A DNA stretch of 58,933 nucleotides, filler included, from Dugesia japonica (taxonomy: Eukaryota), in NCBI GenBank assembly GCA_001938525.1. It is 5 parts of 5 records of this genome, joined end to end, with 100 filler letters (N's around TTAATTAATTAA, not from the genome) between each part and the next. Parts side by side here need not be neighbours in the genome. Positions count along the whole stretch, not along the records: positions 8,917 to 17,134 come from MQRL01300197.1; positions 17,235 to 32,538 come from MQRL01627956.1; 3 more parts are not named here. The stretch is one strand, 5' to 3'. The position numbers and the translations under genes were made by a program. Below, piece after piece: positions 8,873 through 17,404 of the stretch (positions are counted from its first letter, which is position 1; each line of letters begins with the position of its first letter). The notes under the pieces are model-generated. The model searched no databases. It was not told where the DNA came from and saw nothing but the letters and a program-made list of their open reading frames with translations.

Positions 8873-9339
8873 NNNNNNNNNNNNNNNNNNNNNNNNNNNN
8901 NNNNNNNNNNNNNNNNTAATCAATTCTTCGTTTTCTCGACAGCTTTTTACAACTTTATTTTCTTTTTATTGTTTTATCCTAGATTTTATTTGATATTTCT
9001 TACACTTTTAACTTCAGTTATTATTATTTTATAATCATTTCCTGATCATTTCACAGATAAATATTTCTTTTATTTCGTATTATTTTCTTATTCATTTTCT
9101 TATTAACCTTTAATTTATTTCCTTCACTGTTTTTCATATTTCATAAAAGGCTGTTTCAGCCCAACATGTTTTTATAAAATGTACTTGATTTAATTCACTC
9201 TTGGATGAATTTTTCAGATATTCCAAAGCTATTCCAACAATTGAAAGACATTTGTTTTCTATTTGTTTTGAATTTTCCAATAGAGTTTTTATTATTCTAA
9301 TTTTTTTTGTTTTAAATTTGTACTTTTATTATGTTTTCT

Positions 9340-10249
9340 ACTTTATAGCTTTTATTTTGTGATCATATTTGTATTGATCTGCTGCTGTTTGAGGGATAAC
9401 TGGACTGGACTGACTTGGCGACATCTGAGGTGTGAATGACTGGTAGAGAGTATTGTGAAGGAACTCTAAATATCGTATTTCTTCTTCTTTCTCTTTTAAC
9501 TTCTTCTCCTATACGGATTCTAACTTTTTTCTCTTTTCCGTAAGTTTTTTCACTTAAGCTCGTAGGCCTTCGATCATTTTGTCCTTCTTTTCATCCCATT
9601 CTTTGGCGACCTCTAATTCTTTATTTGTTACAATGTTTTTCTTCATATTTGTCGTAGCTTGCTGCATGATTTGCGGGGCCAATATGGCGTCTAATCTATA
9701 ATTGTCCTTATTTGCCGCTATCAGCCCACTTTGTATATTCATTTCAGTTCACATTTCTGATTTTTGACTCTTTGCACTGTTTAACTTTCCAGCATCTGAT
9801 TTCAACTTGCTTAGTTTCCCTTGCACAACTTTCAGGTATGTCTCGAGATCCTCTACCTGATTTTTCTTTTTATCCGTCTTAACCACTTTATTTTTATTGT
9901 AGTCTCTAAGCATGGCCATCTGTTTCCAATGCTGGGCTTCTTATATAATATTTCTGTTTGGGTGTCGCACATATCTTAGTTCGTTCACTTTTCTTTGATT
10001 TTTCGTCCTCTATCTGGTCCACTTGTTCGTTTATTATATGATTCAAGAGTCGATTTCGTAATTTTAATGATATCGTTTCTGCTTCTACTTTTGGGCCTGT
10101 CGGATTGTGGCCGCCTATTGGTATTGAGTTTTGCTGCAAGGAATTTTCTTTAGGTCTTCCTCTTTAACAGGTTCTCCGGAGTATAATTTGTTTCTCAGAC
10201 GTCCGATCTGATCTCGAAGTATAGTTGGGTTGTTTGACAATTCTTGCAT
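9340..10249 (-). pseudogene. Degenerate ~300-aa Lys/Glu-rich, probably coiled-coil accessory ORF of unknown function
   Basis: Begins MQELSNNPTILRDQIGRLRNKLYSGE at 10249 and continues through track ORFs 9906-10139 and 9554-9742 with frameshifts and stops, to ...EIRYLEFLHNTLYQSFTPQMSPSQSSP. Confidence 0.5.
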
Positions 10250-10364
10250 CTAAATGATAAAGCGATTATAATTTGTTATAATTATTAAATATGATTAACT
10301 ATTAAATCGATTAGTCATTATGAATAAAATGAATGTGGATTAATATTTAATTAATATTTTAATA

Positions 10365-10473
10365 TTTTAATATTTTAATAATTTAATATTTAATTAATAA
10401 CCCGTTTAATAATGCTTATATTTTAATATTTTAATAATTTAATATTTAATTAATAACCCGTTTAATAATGCTT
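10365..10473. repeat. ~56-bp AT-rich tandem duplication within an intron-like spacer (10250-10764)
   Basis: TTTTAATATTTTAATAATTTAATATTTAATTAATAACCCGTTTAATAATGCTT occurs twice. Confidence 0.8.
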
Positions 10474-10996
10474 TGGGAATGCTTAATAACTCAATGCTTG
10501 TTCAATTTATAGTTATTAATTTTATGATTATTAACTCGTTTAATAATTTATTTTAATGATAAATCGATTATCATTATTATACCTTGTTGACCCATAGTTT
10601 TATAATTTAGTTTTCTTGTGTAATTATTAATTCGTTTAATAATGCTTCAACACTCGTTAACTAAAGTGACATGATTATCATTAAATAATTAGATTATCAA
10701 ATCGTTTAATAACACATTATTAATGTATTTAATAATCCGTTAAAATATAATTGAATTTGTTACCTTTACTTTCAGTACTCAACTTTGATTCCTTTTATCT
10801 TCTGGATAATTGAGTTTTTGTATTTCTTATTTGGCACAACTTTGCAATTACTTTCACAATTCATTTTCTCGGTACATGATTTGTTTGGTATTTTTATTTG
10901 AAGATTTCTACTTTTACTGTTTTTGTATTTTTGGACTTCTTATGCTTTTGTTTTTTATAATTTACAACTTTATATATACATTTATAATTTACTTTC

Positions 10997-12373
10997 CTAA
11001 CCCACGTTCCTTATCTCGATGAATATGCTATCATTTTTTACGAAGTTTGATAGCACATTTTTAATTGTTATAAACGTTGGGGATCATGATCCTAAGTTCA
11101 TCTCGCATGTGGGTTTCTGTTAGGAGATCCAGCTTGGTTTGCATTCAAATGTTTCACCATGTCCTTCTGACCACCTGTCGTATCCTGGGGTTATTCTCAT
11201 ACTGAATTTGTTTGAGATCGACCATTTCAACTTGTCATCATATTTTTCTTTCCTTATTATAAAGAAAACATTTATATGGTTTCCTTTTCCTGCGCCATCC
11301 CCATGAGGATAAATTCTTAGAGACGCGAGGTAACCTTCTTTAAATAAGTAAAATGGTGGGCTGGTATACTGTCCATCTTTCTCGTCGGGGAAGGATCTTG
11401 CAATGACCAATTTGGCGAGAAAATCTTCTATTTGCCATATATAATGGCATACAGAATACTTGGCATCTGATAGTGCTGAGGGTAAAGATATAGTGGTTTG
11501 ACTTGAATTTTCTTTTAAAGCACTCCATAATTCGTTTTTAGTTTCGTGTATTTTGCTAGATAAAACGTATATCAATTGAAGGGTATGGTTCTTTAGATTT
11601 TCTTATTATTGGTTTATTCTCTGTTCTAAATTAGAAATGATAGCCTGGATATGTTCTTTTGCTTTGTTGAACATATATTTGTTTACTTTCATTCGGGTTC
11701 CTTTAAATTTACATAGATACGGGCATTCTTTAAGTTCTTTAATGCATGTTGATTTATGAGCACTCACTTTTACTAATTCTTCACAACAATTGTTGGAACA
11801 TTTAACTATGAGTTCCTGGCATACTTGTATTTTAATAGAATTCAGGTGATTCTTCATTAGTTTTCTGAGAATCAATCGGTTGCAATTTTCACATTTTACT
11901 TCTACCATGAGACATGATTCGTTAACACGATTCTCTTTGTCGAGTTTAAATAGTAGTGTTTTACACTTTTCGCACATTATAGGAACTGTAGAGCAGTTCT
12001 TTGTATGTTCTTCCAGATTCATTATCTTTTCTTCTAATTCACATTTTTGGTATGGGCAAGTTCCTTGTAGCTCTGCTACTTCTCTGGTTATTGCTCGGTC
12101 GAGTAGTACTTGAGTAACTTCTTCACATTCGATATTAAAACATTTATTTACGTTCTCTCTAAGGTGTTTACTGATGCATTGATAACAATATCTGCATTCA
12201 CAGCTAATTTACATCTGTTCAAGCATTAATAAATTGCATTTGGTACATTTGAACCGCGTTTCTATTTCTTCTGATGACTCGAGCTTTTGTATTAGTTTTA
12301 CAAAATTATCTACTTTCTTGGCAATAAGTGTGAAATCTGACTGAAGTATACTGATTGGATTTGTTTATTGCAT
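10997..12373 (-). pseudogene. TRAF: Intronless TNF-receptor-associated factor (TRAF2/3/5-like): RING, TRAF zinc fingers, coiled coil, MATH/TRAF-C; about 6 premature stops, no frameshift
   Basis: Single frame of 459 codons. RING CTKC...ISCECRYCYQC...CFNIEC; DRAITREVAELQGTCPYQKC; zinc fingers in ORF 11606-12022; MATH YIWQIEDF...TSPPFY..EGYL..LRIYPHGDGAGKGNHINVFFII.K..YDDKLKW; C-terminus QKPTCEMNLGS..PTFI...FVKNDSIFIEI. Confidence 0.92.
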
Positions 12374-12510
12374 CTGAATATTTACAATTTGTTAATTGTT
12401 TCCATAATTATAATTCTATTTATCAAAGACTACGTAAATATAATAGAATTAAGATTTGTAAATTAGTCAGGCCTATACATTTATTTACAGTTGATTTTTA
12501 TTCTTTCGTT

Positions 12511-13008
12511 TTATTTTGGCAACGTTGAAAAAGATATGAATTGTTCATTCTCTTTACGTCTTTGTTCCTTATTAATCATTATATCTAATAAACTTCGTGT
12601 GCCTCTCGTATCTTCTAGTTCAATCTGCAATGCAACATTGTAATTTGTAATAGTTTGGATTTCTATTTTATTATTATCAATGATGTTTCTCTGCTGTTGG
12701 ATGATATTCAAGTAATAGTGGTGGGTATTGGTTGCTTCCAATAATAGGCGACGAGCTTCTAATAAAGCCGATTCTGTTGAAACTATTAATGAATTTAAAG
12801 TACCACAATGCTGTTCCCACAATTATTCTGTTGTAATATTTTTATACACTGGTACATCTAAGAGATTTATTTCATTTGCTGCTATAACTGGTGGATGAGG
12901 AAATACTATTTGAGGATTAAGTGACCTGAGAAAATAAATTCTGTTACTTATATTTGACTGTACACTGGAATGAAAGACTAGTCGTAGTAATTGATTAGCT
13001 TCTGCCAT
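12511..13008 (-). pseudogene. ~165-aa accessory ORF with C-terminal coiled coil, one premature stop
   Basis: Track ORFs 12823-13008 and 12511-12822 abut in the same frame across one TAA; heptad-like ALLEARRLLLEA...IELEDTR. Confidence 0.6.
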
Positions 13009-13109
13009 CTACAATATTATTTTTTTTATCAATTTTCTATATTATTTTCATAAATACAAACATATTCTGCATTGATATACTAATAATGTTTTGTGCAATA
13101 GGAGTTTAT

Positions 13110-15498
13110 TCATGTGAACTTGTATTGCGGTGGTCCACCAATATCATTTGACCACCTGATTCCGGCCCTATCGAATGGTAGTTGCTAATTATTATTTTCT
13201 AGGTTTCGCATTGCCACAGGAAGTTTTAATCCTTTATGCTGCCCTCTGAGTCGTTTGACTACTAATATTGTTGCTATTATACAGATTATGCAAAACATTA
13301 TTGAGGTTGTTGCTGCTAAAACATTCGCCTTCTAGTTCTCCATCTTTGATGTATCTATTGGAATTGCTGAGCTTATTTTTATTATTCCCGCATTGTAAAT
13401 TGATGCAATTTTCGTAGCGTTTGGTTTAGGCATATTTTTATTATTTGTTCTAGAAACGCTTCTGGTTTTGGCGTTAAAACATTAACTTCGTCTATTTGTG
13501 GTTCTGCTTGTTTTGTTTCTGCTTCTTTTACCGTTGTTATCTTTTTCGTAGTTAGTTTTTTGTGGTTGGTACCTTGGCTGTAGATGACACATTTTTATAT
13601 TTTATTTGTTGGATTGGTATTTGTCTGTTCTTCATTATAACAAGCTGTACGAATAATTTATTGTTAAATAGTACGAATTCTCTAATTAAACTGCCTCTCT
13701 CGAATCCTGAGCGTTCTACTGCTAATCTGTTCGTTGTATTTAACCATTGTTCAAGAATGTGGATCTGTTTGACTATTAAATTATTTGCATCTAGACTAGT
13801 CCACTCTTTTTTCGCAGTTTTGCTTGAATGTCTTATAAATGTGTTTATTTTCGTTTTCATTGTTATGGATTGCTTTTTTAGTTTCATAATATGTGGTTTG
13901 GTATCCTGCATTCGATATCGTTCAACGTTTATTTCTTGTCCAGAGAAATTCAGGACCATCACATATATTTTGTTGTAATTGAATTTTATTAGTTGTACGA
14001 TTATTATTGTTTCTGCCATTGAACATCCATTGGATTTTCCAATCCTGAATGTCTGCTTGGTTGTGGTAGTATACATATTCCGCTACTGTGTCATTATACT
14101 AGTTTCATATTCATTAGTGGACTTATTGTATTTGCCCACTCTTGTAAACCCTTCGTGGTTATCCCAACTGTCGTTGTTGTATTGGAATTTTACTATTTGT
14201 ACTGGTTCTGAAGCTTACAATTTTATATTCAGTCCTTCTTTGTTGTTTTTGAGTAACTTTCTTGTTTGCGGAGGCAATGCTGATCCACCTGCTATTCGAG
14301 TAAGAAACCATCTACCTGTTGATGCTCAGTATTTTTTAGCACGACTAGATTCTCGTTTTAAATGTTTCATTCGTTCTTCTACACAGTGATGGCAAAGTGT
14401 TTTTCAACATTTGGGTGATATTCGGATATTTTCGAGAAATTTATTATCACATATCGTTCAAGCTCCATTTTCTTGTCTGATTTCGGGATAATTAGCTAAT
14501 AGTTCTAAGTCATTTTGATGTTGATCCCATTCTTTGTCTTGCTTTTCAAATGCATGTTTCTTGTTGGATTTACGAATTTGGGTTTGCATTGTATTCGTTT
14601 CTTTAGTGTTTGATGTCACCTATTGAGTCTCTTGATCTTTGACTTTCTTGTTCTTTATTTCCTTGGAGGTTCTCTTTGGTGGCAATAGGGTTTCCATGCT
14701 CACTTTTTTTAATTTTACATTAATAGATCGTTCTATGCGTATTATTATCTCAGTAGTGCTTTTTAGACCGTTTATACATATTTATTTTGCGTATTTCATA
14801 GTAATTGGTAGTGGTTTGTTGATTGTTGTATCATCATAAAGACATCTTTTCTTTTGTTCATTTGCTTCATGAATTCGTTTAATTTCTTCTCTGACTCCAA
14901 ATGCAGAAGTTTCTAACTTACTTCTGACAGTTATTAGACAGTGGTAACACATTTTCTTTAATTATTTTCTGCTTATTGGCAATGTTGACGGTCGTAATTT
15001 TATATAAACTAGACATTTGATCTGCTTTGACTCAATTGGTTTTTCGGTTTTGTTTTCTTTTTTATTCTGTCGATCTTTGGTTTTCTGTTGAGTTATTGTC
15101 TGGTTGAAACCTGTGGTAATTGGAGTTATAATATTCTTTTTGCTGAAGTCGACTTCTCTGTTTTCTTGAAACTTTGACTGCTTAAAGTTCAGATACCATT
15201 CTGCCTGTTTAAATCCAACCGCTCTAATTTCTTGTCATTTTGCTTGCATAAAATTAGCTGCTTTAACTGTTTCTATTTTGTTGTCATTAGACAGTAAGCA
15301 CAATAATTCTTTATACATTCTTTGTTGATAGGAAGTTGTTTAGGTACTTCGCGGTATCTAAAACATTTATTGTCTTTGGATTGGTGTCTGTTTTTATCCT
15401 GTGTACGGTACAGTTCTCTCCATTATAGAGCTACCGTTGACTCTGATACCATTAATTCCTATCAAAAATAAATATTACCTTGGTAAAAATAAAATTAT
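13110..15498 (-). pseudogene. Degenerate env-like type-I membrane protein (~800 codons)
   Basis: Hydrophobic signal-like IILFLPR*YLFLIGING (15498-15448); Cys-containing ectodomain broken by stops and frameshifts (includes ORF 13552-14076); Thr-rich stalk; TM VLAATTSIMFCIICIIATILVV (13322-13257) followed by KRLR; tail ending GGPPQYKFT*. Lies directly 3' of the integrase. Confidence 0.6.
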
Positions 15499-15609
15499 AC
15501 TGTTCTTTGATCTATTAGTATTTTATTTATTCGTGTGACACCACATTTTTTACAAGAGTTTGTTTCTGATTTTTTGCTGACTTGTAACATACAAATTTTG
15601 TTCTGGCTG

Positions 15610-16890
15610 AGATCTGAGATCGTAATCTTTAACTTCTGTTGGTGATTGAATTCGTATTTCTTGTGGTTTTCGTCCACGTTTTAATCCTTTATACGGCAAT
15701 TTTTGCTCATTCTACGAGTCACTCGATGAGTATTGAGTTGGTTCTGTTCCTTCTAATTCTTGTACTTCTGTTTCTTAGATTTACGTGATGATTTGTTCAT
15801 CTGTCACTTTTGTTAACGCTTCCTTTTTGCATCGATTTACATGAATCCATAGTAGTTTCTGGAGTATTTTACCAACTAATCTGACTTTTATATTGGTTTC
15901 TGTGACTGCTAATACTTCGTAAGGCACTTTACCTAGTTTCCTATCCTTTGCTATCGTTCCGATTTCTATTTCCGGAGTATTAACTAATACTCTATCTTCT
16001 TCCTTGAACGCATGGGGTTTCGCTTTCTTGTCATGATAATCTTTGACACTTTCTTGATAATATTTGATATTTAATCGTGCTTCATTCCAGATCTCCTGCA
16101 TTTCCTCTTTCATTCGAATGATATACTCTTCTTGTTCCATATACTATAATATTGGAGGCTGGTATTCCAAATCGATTAGTAAATTACATTTTCTTTCAAA
16201 AAATGGAGTGTATTTTGTAGCTAAGTGTACTTGTGTTCGATAAAAAATAGTACCAAATGTATAAATTGATCCCAGTCTTTCTGTTTTCTGTCGACATAAC
16301 AATATATCTTATTAATTAAGGTTCAGCTAAATCTTTCTACTAGCCCGTCTATTTGTGAATGATATGGTGATGTTCTCAATTTTAATATTGGAAAATATCT
16401 AATGACTTCTGTAAAAATGTCACTCATGAAATTTCTGCCTTGATCAGTTAGGATTTTCTTAGGTGTACAATATCTGCTTCAAATTTACTTTACAAATATT
16501 TCTGCTATCGTTATGGTTTTTTGATTTTTCATTGGAAATGCTTCAGGGTATTTAGATAGATAATCCATACATACAAGAATGTATGAGCTTCCATCTACAG
16601 TTTCGGGTAATGTTCCGACTACGTCCATCGCCATGATCTCCATCGGTTTAGTTAGTATTGGCATTGGTTTTGATGATGCCTTTTCTAAAGTTCCTGTTCC
16701 TCTTCTGGAAGCGACTATTGACAATGTGCTATCCAATCCTTCACATCTTGAGCGATTCTTGACCAATAGTATTTGCGTCTTAATTTGGCTTCGGTTTTTC
16801 TTGCTGACATATGTCCTCCGACGACTTCATTATGGTATTTTTGTAAAATTCGTTCTCTGTGCAATTTTGGTACAATTATCTCCATTCTGT
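15610..16890 (-). pseudogene. Ty3/Gypsy integrase (zinc-binding, DDE core, GPY/F-like C-terminus), disrupted
   Basis: IVPKLHRERILQKYHNEVVGGHMSARKT..LRRKYYW..IAQDVKDWIAHC; MDVVGTLP...YILVCMDYLSKYPEAFP; PKKILTDQGRNF...TSPYH.Q.DGLVERF; ORF 15781-16140 with VPYEV and WIHVNRCK; in-frame YDLRS at 15624-15610. Confidence 0.93.
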
Positions 16891-17404
16891 GCCATTAACC
16901 GTCCCTTTTTAATTGTGTAACGACATCCATTTTCAGTAAGTGTTCTCTCATTTCTGGGTCACATAGTGATATGTATAATATCAACGATATTATTAACAAT
17001 AGCAATGGTGTTATAATCGATAGTAATATTAGCAATAATAATAATTTTAAATAATCTTATTAATATCTGATACTAATAATACTAATAGTAAGAGTATGAA
17101 TAATAATAATATTAGTAATAATAATAAGAAGAAGNNNNNNNNNNNNNNNNNNNNNNNNNNNNNNNNNNNNNNNNNNNNTTAATTAATTAANNNNNNNNNN
17201 NNNNNNNNNNNNNNNNNNNNNNNNNNNNNNNNNNTATTATTCTTTTATTGATTTGCCACAAAAAAATTCCCCGAATCAATCTGTCTATTTAATTTACCTC
17301 ACACCGACCACTGGCTTAGATTATAGATTGTTAAATGAAGTTGCAGAAAGACCAATTTTTCCTATTCCAAACAATAAAGATTTAGACGATCTCATCAAGA
17401 ATAT

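What the first reader, a model, noticed from the sequence alone, without database searches (positions are those of the whole stretch)
8916..16960. Complex Gypsy-type retroelement carrying an env-like gene, a full-length TRAF and two more accessory ORFs
Seen: on one gap-free contig, all on the minus strand and tightly packed, are a Ty3/Gypsy integrase (16890-15610), an ~800-codon type-I membrane ORF (15498-13110), a ~165-aa coiled-coil ORF (13008-12511), a RING-zinc finger-MATH TRAF (12373-10997) and a ~300-aa ORF (10249-9340). All share the same A-rich strand bias and similar decay. Known: ordinary Metaviridae have at most one ORF after pol; TRAFs are the E3/adaptor hubs of TNFR and TLR signalling and cell death. 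Inference: this is the 3' half of a giant, possibly infectious retroelement with a multi-gene accessory region that manipulates host immune or apoptotic signalling. I do not know of a described LTR element carrying a complete TRAF, though I cannot search the literature here.
Basis: partly seen in the sequence, partly recalled or inferred. Interest (0 to 1): 0.93.

Follow-up and report, generated by a model that had tools for sequence, protein, structure and literature searches.

The report
Dead Gypsy-type fragment beside membrane-protein/TRAF gene block
A decayed Gypsy-type integrase is followed on the same strand by a broken membrane-protein, coiled-coil and TRAF gene block that survives intact in an unidentified organism, but whether the block belongs to the retroelement is unproven, and TRAF-carrying giant Gypsy elements are already described in planarians.

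Summary
On the minus strand lie five broken reading frames: a Ty3/Gypsy-like integrase (HHCC finger, DD35E core, GPY/F-like tail), a ~770-codon type-I membrane ORF, a ~165-codon coiled-coil ORF, a full RING/zf-TRAF/coiled-coil/MATH TRAF, and a ~300-codon K/E-rich ORF. All five decay alike (0.6-2.2 in-frame stops per 100 codons; background 6.7).

New here: the membrane-ORF C-terminus, the 163-aa ORF and the TRAF recur in the same order, with similar spacers and intact frames, on short contigs from three environmental or sequencing data sets (42-58% amino-acid identity). TRAF paralogues there show dN/dS of about 0.19. Three of the four post-integrase ORFs start directly after YAG, which looks like a splice acceptor.

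Not shown: any link between this block and an integrase outside this window, and any LTR, PBS, RT or gag. "Env-like" rests on position and topology only.

The novelty claim fails. Planarian Burro/GYPSM1 Gypsy elements are published as carrying RING, Smc, MATH_TRAF_C, BIR, BCL2-like and env-like parts (PMC6431247). This copy is dead, not infectious.

Best reading (about 0.5): the 3' part of a complex, env-position-bearing Gypsy-like element, a new variant of a known kind.

The parts
17034..17134 (.). (AAT)n-type microsatellite running to the end of the piece. From about 16960 upward the minus strand turns T-rich and nothing RNase H-like is seen.
15781..16960 (-). Ty3/Gypsy-like integrase, broken (5 in-frame stops, 2 frameshifts). 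It has an HHCC finger, a DD35E core and a GPY/F-like C-terminal module. It is cut off at its 5' side, with no RT or RNase H upstream.
   Evidence: Pfam Integrase_H2C2 E 2e-17 and weak rve; motifs read; Ty3 Gag-Pol 7q5b is the best PDB hit; counts
15547..15780 (-). Spacer between the integrase stop and the first in-frame ATG of the membrane ORF. No LTR, PPT or PBS signature was recognised.
13110..15546 (-). Type-I membrane ORF in the env position, broken (17 in-frame stops, at least 1 frameshift). It has a hydrophobic N-terminal stretch (start uncertain), a long K/N-rich ectodomain, and a transmembrane segment plus basic cytoplasmic tail. The tail region is its best conserved part.
   Evidence: no Pfam family; AF2 model of a 174-aa piece unusable, pLDDT 36
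12511..13008 (-). Homologue of the relatives' 163-aa ORF, broken (1 in-frame stop). It has a disordered N-terminal third followed by one ~100-residue helix. It starts directly after TTGTAG.
   Evidence: tblastn 43% identity over 159 residues; alignment A5; AF2 helix 50-152, pLDDT above 90
10997..12373 (-). Full-length TRAF in one frame, broken (6 in-frame stops, no frameshift), with no intron. Domains: RING variant (~12250-12120), TRAF zinc fingers (~12010-11700), coiled coil, MATH (~11446-11009). It starts directly after TTCAG.
10346..10740 (.). AT-rich repeat block (GC ~21%) between the TRAF and the 3' ORF. A 56-nt unit occurs twice exactly, with five degenerate copies sharing a CGTTTAATAAT-type core.
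9340..10249 (-). K/E-rich, coiled-coil-like 3' ORF, broken (3 in-frame stops, at least 1 frameshift). No homologue and no Pfam family were found, so its membership of the unit is unproven. It starts directly after TTTAG.
8917..9339 (-). A-rich non-coding tail running to the end of the piece (GC ~24%, stops dense in all frames).

Best explanation
The piece is the dead, 5'-truncated 3' portion of a complex Ty3/Gypsy-like retroelement in an AT-rich, probably metazoan genome.

After pol (only the integrase survives) it carried, in order: a type-I membrane glycoprotein in the position where errantiviruses carry env; a small protein that is essentially one long helix; a complete TRAF2/3/5-like RING/zinc-finger/MATH protein; and possibly a fourth K/E-rich ORF.

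Inferred working of the live ancestor:
- The downstream ORFs were expressed from spliced (cis- or SL-trans-spliced) sub-genomic RNAs whose acceptors (YAG) abut each ATG.
- The TRAF acted as an element-encoded E3/adaptor, possibly together with the helix protein and the conserved cytoplasmic tail of the membrane protein. It would have interfered with or mimicked host TNFR/TLR-type signalling or cell death, as proposed for planarian Burro elements and shown for the iridovirus TRAF ORF111L.

Shown: the domains, the order, the shared decay, and the conservation and selection of the three-gene block in relatives.

Inferred: that the block and the integrase are one element, the splicing, and every functional statement.
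For: - Five modules lie on one strand with short spacers and the same A-rich bias, non-coding stretches included.
- In-frame stop densities are homogeneous, 0.6-2.2 per 100 codons against 6.7 background, chi-square p 0.37. This fits one inactivation event.
- All ORFs are intronless. The TRAF reads in one frame against a 452-aa relative.
- The membrane-ORF C-terminus, 163-aa ORF and TRAF are co-linear, intact and similarly spaced in L001, L006 and L007, which come from three data sets. Identities are 58%, 43% and 42%.
- Relatives are under purifying selection: TRAF L002 vs L004 dN/dS 0.19.
- Several diverged copies or paralogues occur in one sample: L002 vs L004 are 80% identical in nucleotides, including flank.
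- This TRAF lineage is far from all named cellular TRAFs, at most 26-31% identity.
- YAG lies directly before the ATG at 3 of 4 ORFs (P about 0.002) and is conserved in relatives.
- Precedent: Burro/GYPSM1 (PMC6431247), and env-carrying Gypsy elements across metazoans (PMC13524379).
Against: - No relative's contig links the block to an integrase or RT. All are 1.3-2.8 kb.
- There is no LTR, PPT, PBS, TSD, RT, PR or gag in the piece.
- The first ~70 codons of the membrane ORF have near-background stop density. Up to ~480 nt after the integrase may therefore be non-coding and could hold a short LTR.
- L002-type TRAFs stand alone, not preceded by the 163-aa ORF, and face a convergent, selected 83-aa gene. 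That layout looks like ordinary cellular or DNA-virus gene organisation.
- The membrane ORF matches no Env, F or gB family.
- The homogeneity test has low power.
Confidence: 0.5

Rival explanations
1. Host gene cluster beside an unrelated Gypsy relic. The membrane protein, helix protein, TRAF and perhaps the 3' ORF form an operon-like cellular gene cluster, resolved by SL trans-splicing, or a retro-copied duplicate of one. It has decayed next to a truncated Gypsy integrase fragment that merely landed upstream.
For: - Spacers of 100-140 nt with an acceptor-like YAG at the ATG resemble trans-spliced operons.
- Relatives' contigs hold the block or a lone TRAF with no retroelement gene.
- L002/L004 TRAFs have a convergent, selected neighbour gene.
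- TRAF families are hugely expanded in some invertebrates, for example planarians (PMC6109357).
- The integrase fragment is truncated and lacks LTRs.
Against: - Four consecutive intronless genes all pseudogenised to the same degree as the adjacent integrase.
- The same strand and composition hold throughout, spacers included.
- The TRAF lineage is absent from all named genomes searched and at most 31% identical to named TRAFs.
- Several diverged copies occur in one sample.
Confidence: 0.22
2. Another kind of mobile element or endogenous virus. The integrase would be the transposase of a Ginger-type DNA transposon (Gypsy-integrase-related), or the block would derive from an integrated large DNA virus or another virus. 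In either case there was never an RT.
For: - The integrase sequence starts abruptly ~25 codons before the HHCC finger, with a possible ATG and no RNase H upstream.
- Family assignment rests on integrase alone.
- Relatives are AT-rich, compact and intronless, with genes on both strands (L002/L004).
- A DNA virus with its own TRAF is known: ISKNV ORF111L (PMC3352826).
Against: - The stretch upstream of the HHCC finger and the GPY/F-like tail are as in Gypsy pol.
- The composition flip plus microsatellite at 16960-17134 looks like truncation or a contig end, not a gene start.
- No terminal inverted repeat was found.
- No relative was found in the viral contig collection.
Confidence: 0.13
3. Burro-like layout read across an element boundary. 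The integrase ends element A, a short LTR lies in 15780-15300, and the membrane ORF, helix ORF and TRAF are upstream accessory ORFs of a tandem or adjacent element B. This would match the Dugesia tigrina Burro-like element, where the MATH_TRAF_C part lies in an ORF upstream of gag-pol.
For: - PMC6431247 describes such an upstream accessory TRAF ORF and notes decayed Burro fragments in another planarian.
- The stretch 15780-15300 is of doubtful coding value.
- An AT-rich tandem repeat lies after the TRAF, as drawn for Burro.
Against: - No TG...CA LTR ends, PBS or PPT were recognisable there.
- The ORF after the TRAF is a ~300-codon K/E-rich ORF with no gag or zinc-knuckle signature, followed by non-coding DNA rather than a giant polyprotein.
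Confidence: 0.1

Closest known systems
Burro / GYPSM1 giant Gypsy-like LTR retrotransposons of planarians (Jurka 2007; Grohme et al. 2018; reviewed in PMC6431247)
   Same: A Gypsy-type element associated with a RING + coiled-coil (Smc) + MATH_TRAF_C module, an env-like part, tandem repeats and accessory ORFs. Decayed fragments with stops and frameshifts are reported in one species. The proposed role is meddling with host apoptosis and ubiquitin signalling.
   Different: In Burro the TRAF-like part sits inside the gag-pol polyprotein or in an ORF upstream of it, and env lies between gag and pol. Here the TRAF is a separate, complete ORF downstream of the integrase, after a membrane ORF and a small helix ORF. 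No BIR, BCL2-like or ankyrin parts are in the piece. Sequence relatedness to Burro could not be tested because no Burro sequence was at hand.
Errantivirus-type (env-carrying) Ty3/Gypsy elements of metazoans (PMC13524379)
   Same: A membrane glycoprotein ORF directly after pol (GAG-POL-ENV order) in a Gypsy-like element. Such elements are widespread in invertebrates.
   Different: Their Env is F-type or herpesvirus-gB-type. The membrane ORF here matches neither by sequence, and its best conserved part is the transmembrane segment and cytoplasmic tail. Errantiviruses carry one post-pol ORF, not three or four. In flatworms the reported order is GAG-ENV-POL.
Bdelloid-rotifer LTR retrotransposons and foamy-like fish ERVs with captured additional or accessory ORFs (PMC5408684; PMC6431247)
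   Same: LTR retroelements that have picked up extra ORFs after or around pol.
   Different: The captured genes there are different (env-like, GDSL esterase/lipase, dUTPase, unknown). No TRAF is reported.
Viral TRAF ORF111L of the iridovirus ISKNV (PMC3352826)
   Same: A parasite-encoded TRAF-family protein acting on host death-receptor signalling. This is a functional analogy.
   Different: It belongs to a large DNA virus of fish. Relatedness was not tested here and no sequence was fetched.
Cellular TRAF2/3/5
   Same: RING, TRAF zinc fingers, coiled coil and MATH in the same order. The MATH part is closest to TRAF2, TRAF3 and TRAF5 in the PDB.
   Different: At most 26-31% identity to named TRAFs. 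The RING has Cys where RINGs usually have the His ligand. The gene is intronless and sits in a same-strand block next to an integrase.

Membership tests
Ty3/Gypsy (Metaviridae) LTR retroelement | Integrase with an HHCC zinc finger, DD35E core and GPY/F-type C-terminal module | tested here: met
   Integrase_H2C2 E 2e-17 and two weak rve matches. D, D-35-E and a GPY/F-like motif read. Best PDB hit is Ty3 Gag-Pol, E 0.0095. Ginger DNA transposons share this integrase type, so the feature is necessary but not sufficient.
Ty3/Gypsy (Metaviridae) LTR retroelement | RT, RNase H, protease and gag upstream of the integrase | tested here: inconclusive
   Only ~175 nt lie upstream of the integrase. They are T-rich low complexity plus a microsatellite with nothing RNase H-like. 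The piece ends there.
Ty3/Gypsy (Metaviridae) LTR retroelement | Long terminal repeats with PPT, PBS and target-site duplication | tested here: inconclusive
   No long direct repeat and no tRNA-like or PBS signal. The only purine runs lie inside K/E-rich coding sequence. A single 3' LTR cannot be recognised without a second copy.
Ty3/Gypsy (Metaviridae) LTR retroelement | Dispersed multi-copy family with the same internal order | not testable with these tools
   No eukaryotic genome DNA search was available. Exact look-ups of window ORFs found nothing. Relatives' contigs are too short.
Retroelement Env (F-type or gB-type fusion glycoprotein) | Sequence or fold homology to a known fusion glycoprotein | tested here: not met
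   No Pfam family for five pieces of the window's ORF or for the two partial relatives' C-terminal proteins, at E up to 0.1-5 depending on the piece. The AF2 model of the largest piece has pLDDT 36. The test is weak because the ORF is broken and no intact full-length relative was found.
Retroelement Env (F-type or gB-type fusion glycoprotein) | Type-I topology and position directly after pol | tested here: met
   Transmembrane segment and ~50-aa tail confirmed against intact relatives. The ORF follows the integrase after ~235 nt. The N-terminal signal-like stretch is doubtful.
TRAF family | RING, TRAF-type zinc fingers, coiled coil and C-terminal MATH/TRAF-C domain in that order | tested here: met
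   zf-TRAF and MATH in the window. TRAF3_RING (weak), zf-TRAF and MATH in intact relatives. Full-length collinear alignment. PDB hits are TRAF2/3/5.
Burro / GYPSM1 family | TRAF-like module inside or upstream of the gag-pol polyprotein, env between gag and pol, and BIR, BCL2-like and ankyrin parts | tested here: not met
   Here the TRAF is a separate ORF downstream of the integrase, and no BIR, BCL2-like or ankyrin match occurs in the piece. Sequence kinship to Burro was not testable.
Complex-retrovirus-like expression of accessory genes | Splice acceptors upstream of each accessory ORF, used in sub-genomic mRNAs | tested here: inconclusive
   YAG lies directly before the ATG at 3 of 4 ORFs and is conserved in relatives. 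No transcript data were available to show use.

The most novel reading that the evidence does not exclude
A retroelement (or virus) lineage carries its own complete signalling cassette, and live relatives still circulate in an unidentified invertebrate. The cassette would comprise a receptor-like type-I membrane protein with a strongly conserved cytoplasmic tail, a one-helix adaptor and a dedicated TRAF, each expressed from an acceptor abutting its ATG. Instead of recruiting host TRAFs (as EBV LMP1 does), the parasite would bring the receptor, adaptor and E3 together.
Probability: 0.2. Interest if true: 0.8.

Novelty: new variant of a known kind. Interest (0 to 1): 0.5.

Why it matters
If the block truly belongs to the Gypsy-like element, it is a second, differently built case of an LTR retroelement carrying a whole TRAF, after planarian Burro. 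Here the TRAF is a stand-alone post-pol gene beside a membrane protein and a helix protein, and relatives kept the genes intact under selection. That would make 'retroelements that carry host-signalling hubs' a recurring theme rather than a planarian oddity. It would also offer intact natural proteins (P0001, P0072, P0069, P0085) for descriptive structural and expression work. If the block is a host cluster, the finding reduces to a pseudogenised TRAF locus next to a dead transposon.

Tried and rejected
- Alternative genetic code as the cause of the stops: rejected, because TAA, TAG and TGA all occur in frame in roughly background proportions.
- Word-indexed protein search with the 200-aa TRAF piece: nothing, because of the length filter.
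- Exact look-ups of two window ORFs to find the source record: not on record.
- Pattern scans for relatives of the TRAF, the membrane-ORF tail, the 163-aa ORF and the integrase tail in JGI metagenome contigs and IMG/VR: none. L008 is a weak, probably chance hit (26% identity) and was not pursued.
- Pfam on membrane-ORF and 3' ORF pieces: nothing.
- AF2 on the 174-aa membrane-ORF piece: unusable. No fold search was run on it, or on the single-helix model of the 163-aa protein, since the matches would be meaningless.
- Rfam and tRNA scans: empty.
- Similarity between sequences downstream of the relatives' TRAFs and the window's 3' region: none.
- Sample accessions in the literature: no hit.
- The Grohme et al. 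2018 paper is not held.
- The source organism could not be identified. Named distant TRAF hits are all metazoan.
Full report
Only 8917-17134 was analysed. Relatives were obtained only through searches seeded with the finding's own proteins or their hits. Broken genes were searched piece by piece.

While choosing piece bounds and reading frames, my working reasoning located a few individual breaks, and one script print-out shows the first three codons after each ATG. None of these places is listed in the notes or in this report, and nothing was deleted.

**1. What is in the sequence.**

The piece is 30-37% GC, and its minus strand is A-rich in every 500-nt window. Stop-codon density picks out long stretches of one minus-strand frame at 1-3 stops per 100 codons, against 6.7 on average.

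- *Integrase.* Pfam gives Integrase_H2C2 (E 2e-17) and two weak rve matches for 16885-16326.
  - Translation shows the HHCC finger, both Asp residues, a Glu 35 residues after the second Asp, and a GPY/F-like C-terminal module.
  - These motifs are spread over three frames.
  - The only informative solved-structure hit is the Ty3 Gag-Pol polyprotein.
- *TRAF.* Pfam gives zf-TRAF (E 7e-8) and MATH (E 1e-14) for 12022-11123.
  - The whole TRAF, 12373-10997, reads in one frame.
  - It contains a RING variant, zinc fingers, a coiled coil and a MATH domain.
  - The MATH part is closest to TRAF2/3/5.
- *Membrane ORF.* It runs from 15546 at the earliest to 13110 and is K/N-rich. Its transmembrane segment lies in a shifted frame.
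- *Break counts.*

| Module | In-frame stops | Frameshifts |
|---|---|---|
| Integrase | 5 | 2 |
| Membrane ORF | 17 | at least 1 |
| 163-aa-type ORF | 1 | 0 |
| TRAF | 6 | 0 |
| 3' ORF | 3 | at least 1 |

- Stop densities do not differ among the modules (chi-square p 0.37). TAA, TAG and TGA all occur in frame, so this is decay and not a ciliate-type code.
- Upstream of about 16960 the strand turns T-rich and ends in an (AAT)n microsatellite. There is no RNase H, RT, gag, LTR, tRNA-like site or Rfam match in the piece.

**2. Relatives.**

A full HMMER scan of 1.84 billion representative proteins with a 200-aa TRAF piece found only two close clusters (47-56% identity). Everything else was at or below 35%. 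A second search from the intact relative P0001 found a small subfamily: P0001, P0072, P0002/P0069, and more distantly P0004. The nearest named protein was a Trichoplax TRAF at 28%. Other named distant hits are a planarian TRAF-4, a brachiopod and sponges, all metazoan.

*The conserved block.* P0001 lies on L001, a 2.75-kb contig from JGI sample 3300016484. L001 carries three intact same-strand genes: the C-terminal 183 aa of a protein, a 163-aa protein, and the 452-aa TRAF.
- The partial first protein has a Thr-rich, mucin-like stalk, a transmembrane segment and a ~50-aa tail.
- tblastn places the three on the window at 13439-13116 (58% identity), 13008-12520 (43%) and 12361-11009 (42%), in the same order.
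- The spacers are similar and partly alignable.
- Near-identical copies of this arrangement occur in a Logan assembly (L006) and an ENA assembly (L007).

*Lone TRAFs.* A second TRAF type (L002, L003, L004) occurs in the same samples on ~2-kb contigs.
- It is not preceded by the 163-aa gene.
- It faces a convergent 83-aa tail-anchored ORF whose differences fall 9:9:38 by codon position, which marks it as a real gene.
- L002 and L004 are 80% identical in nucleotides, flanks included, with TRAF dN/dS of 0.19.

*Limits.* None of these contigs is long enough to show what lies upstream of the membrane protein. Scans of the metagenome and viral contig collections found no further relatives. The key test, whether the block is linked to an integrase elsewhere, therefore could not be made.

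**3. Extra anatomy.**

- The 163-aa protein folds as a disordered N-terminal third plus one ~100-residue helix at pLDDT above 90. This confirms 'coiled-coil'.
- The most conserved part of the membrane protein is its transmembrane segment and juxtamembrane tail, 68% identity against 42% for the TRAF. That pattern fits a protein whose inner face matters.
- Three of the four post-integrase ORFs begin directly after YAG (TTGTAG|ATG, TTCAG|ATG, TTTAG|ATG). Only 7.7% of ATGs on this strand do so, giving P about 0.002. The first two sites are conserved in L001, L006 and L007. This suggests splice or trans-splice acceptors.
- Between the TRAF and the 3' ORF lies a 21%-GC repeat block with an exact 56-nt duplication.
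- The 3' ORF has no relative. Downstream sequences of the relatives' TRAFs are unrelated to it, so its membership rests only on strand, decay and the YAG|ATG start.

**4. Interpretation.**

*Best reading (confidence about 0.5).* The piece is the dead 3' part of a complex Gypsy-like element. Its post-pol region carried a membrane glycoprotein in the env position, a helix protein, a TRAF and perhaps a fourth ORF, all expressed by splicing.
- The arguments for one element are the shared strand, tight packing, shared composition in non-coding stretches too, equal decay, absence of introns, the distance of this TRAF lineage from named cellular TRAFs, and several diverged copies per sample.
- The arguments against are the missing linkage in relatives, the missing LTR and RT, the doubtful ~480 nt after the integrase, and the cell-like layout of the lone TRAF loci.

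*Rivals.*
- A trans-spliced, operon-like host cluster decayed beside an unrelated Gypsy relic (0.22).
- Another element type, either a Ginger-type transposon whose transposase is Gypsy-integrase-like or a DNA-virus fragment (0.13).
- A Burro-like layout read across an element boundary, with a short LTR after the integrase (0.10).

*On 'env-like'.* No F-type, gB-type or other Env family matched, and structure prediction failed. The label therefore means position and topology only.

*On function.* Interference with, or mimicry of, TNFR/TLR-type signalling or cell death is inference from what TRAFs do. It draws on the published proposal for Burro and the characterised iridovirus TRAF ORF111L.

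**5. Known or new.**

- GYPSM1/Burro of Schmidtea carries RING (AIR1), Smc, MATH_TRAF_C, BIR, ankyrin, BCL2-like and env-like parts.
- A Dugesia tigrina relative has the MATH_TRAF_C part in a separate accessory ORF.
- Dugesia japonica holds decayed fragments (PMC6431247).
- Planarians also have about 100 expressed MATH/TRAF genes (PMC6109357).
- Env-carrying Gypsy elements are widespread in metazoans (PMC13524379).

Three things differ here. The TRAF is a separate, complete gene downstream of the integrase. It has a fixed partnership with a membrane protein and a helix protein. Intact, selected relatives exist. I rate this a new variant of a known kind, conditional on the unproven linkage.

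**6. Verdict.**

- This copy is dead. 'Giant' and 'infectious' are not shown.
- Interest is 0.5.
- The most novel reading not excluded is a parasite-borne receptor-adaptor-TRAF cassette with live relatives. Its probability is about 0.2 and its interest would be 0.8 if true.

Noticed in passing
L002:1558-1809 (-) and L004:1543-1794 (-): An 83-aa ORF with a C-terminal hydrophobic anchor lies convergent to the TRAF in two paralogous loci. Differences fall 9:9:38 by codon position, so it is a selected gene. No Pfam family matched and there is no counterpart in the window.
   Followed up: partly
window 13008, 12373, 10249 (minus-strand ATGs); L001:686, 1291; L006; L007: YAG lies directly before the start codon of three of the four post-integrase ORFs and is conserved in relatives (TTGTAG|ATG; TTCAG(A)|ATG). 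The sites look like splice or trans-splice acceptors.
   Followed up: partly
window 13298-13188 (-); L007:1-642; L001:3-551: The transmembrane segment and juxtamembrane basic tail (…CIIATIL..KRLRGQHK.L.LP…RNLE) are the most conserved part of the membrane protein: 68% identity against 42-43% for its neighbours.
   Followed up: partly
window 12250-12120 (-); P0001 residues 42-82: The RING of this TRAF lineage has Cys at the position where RING fingers usually have the His ligand, and unusual spacing of the last ligand pair. Pfam RING matches are only weak.
   Followed up: no
P0069 / P0002 versus P0001 and the window (alignment A1, columns 128-154): The L002-type TRAFs lack a 27-residue stretch, one zinc-finger unit, that is present in P0001 and in the window's TRAF.
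   Followed up: no
window 10346-10740: An AT-rich block contains an exact 56-nt tandem duplication plus five degenerate copies sharing a CGTTTAATAAT-like core, between the TRAF and the 3' ORF. Its role is unknown. Burro elements are also drawn with internal tandem repeats.
   Followed up: no
window 16960-17134: The strand composition flips from A-rich to T-rich on the minus strand and the piece ends in an (AAT)n microsatellite. This is probably why the contig ends here and where the element is truncated.
   Followed up: partly
window 15697-15678 and 13242-13223: A 20-nt direct repeat (90% identity) links the integrase/membrane-ORF spacer with the region coding the membrane protein's tail. It is probably chance.
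   Followed up: no
L001, L003 (JGI 3300016484); L002, L004, L007 (ENA ERZ27292660); L006 (SRR6423791): The same two sequence types recur at 98-99% nucleotide identity in independent assemblies, so one organism, still unnamed, underlies these data sets. All contigs are 1.3-2.8 kb and A-rich, and L001 ends in an A-rich run, so they may be transcripts.
   Followed up: partly
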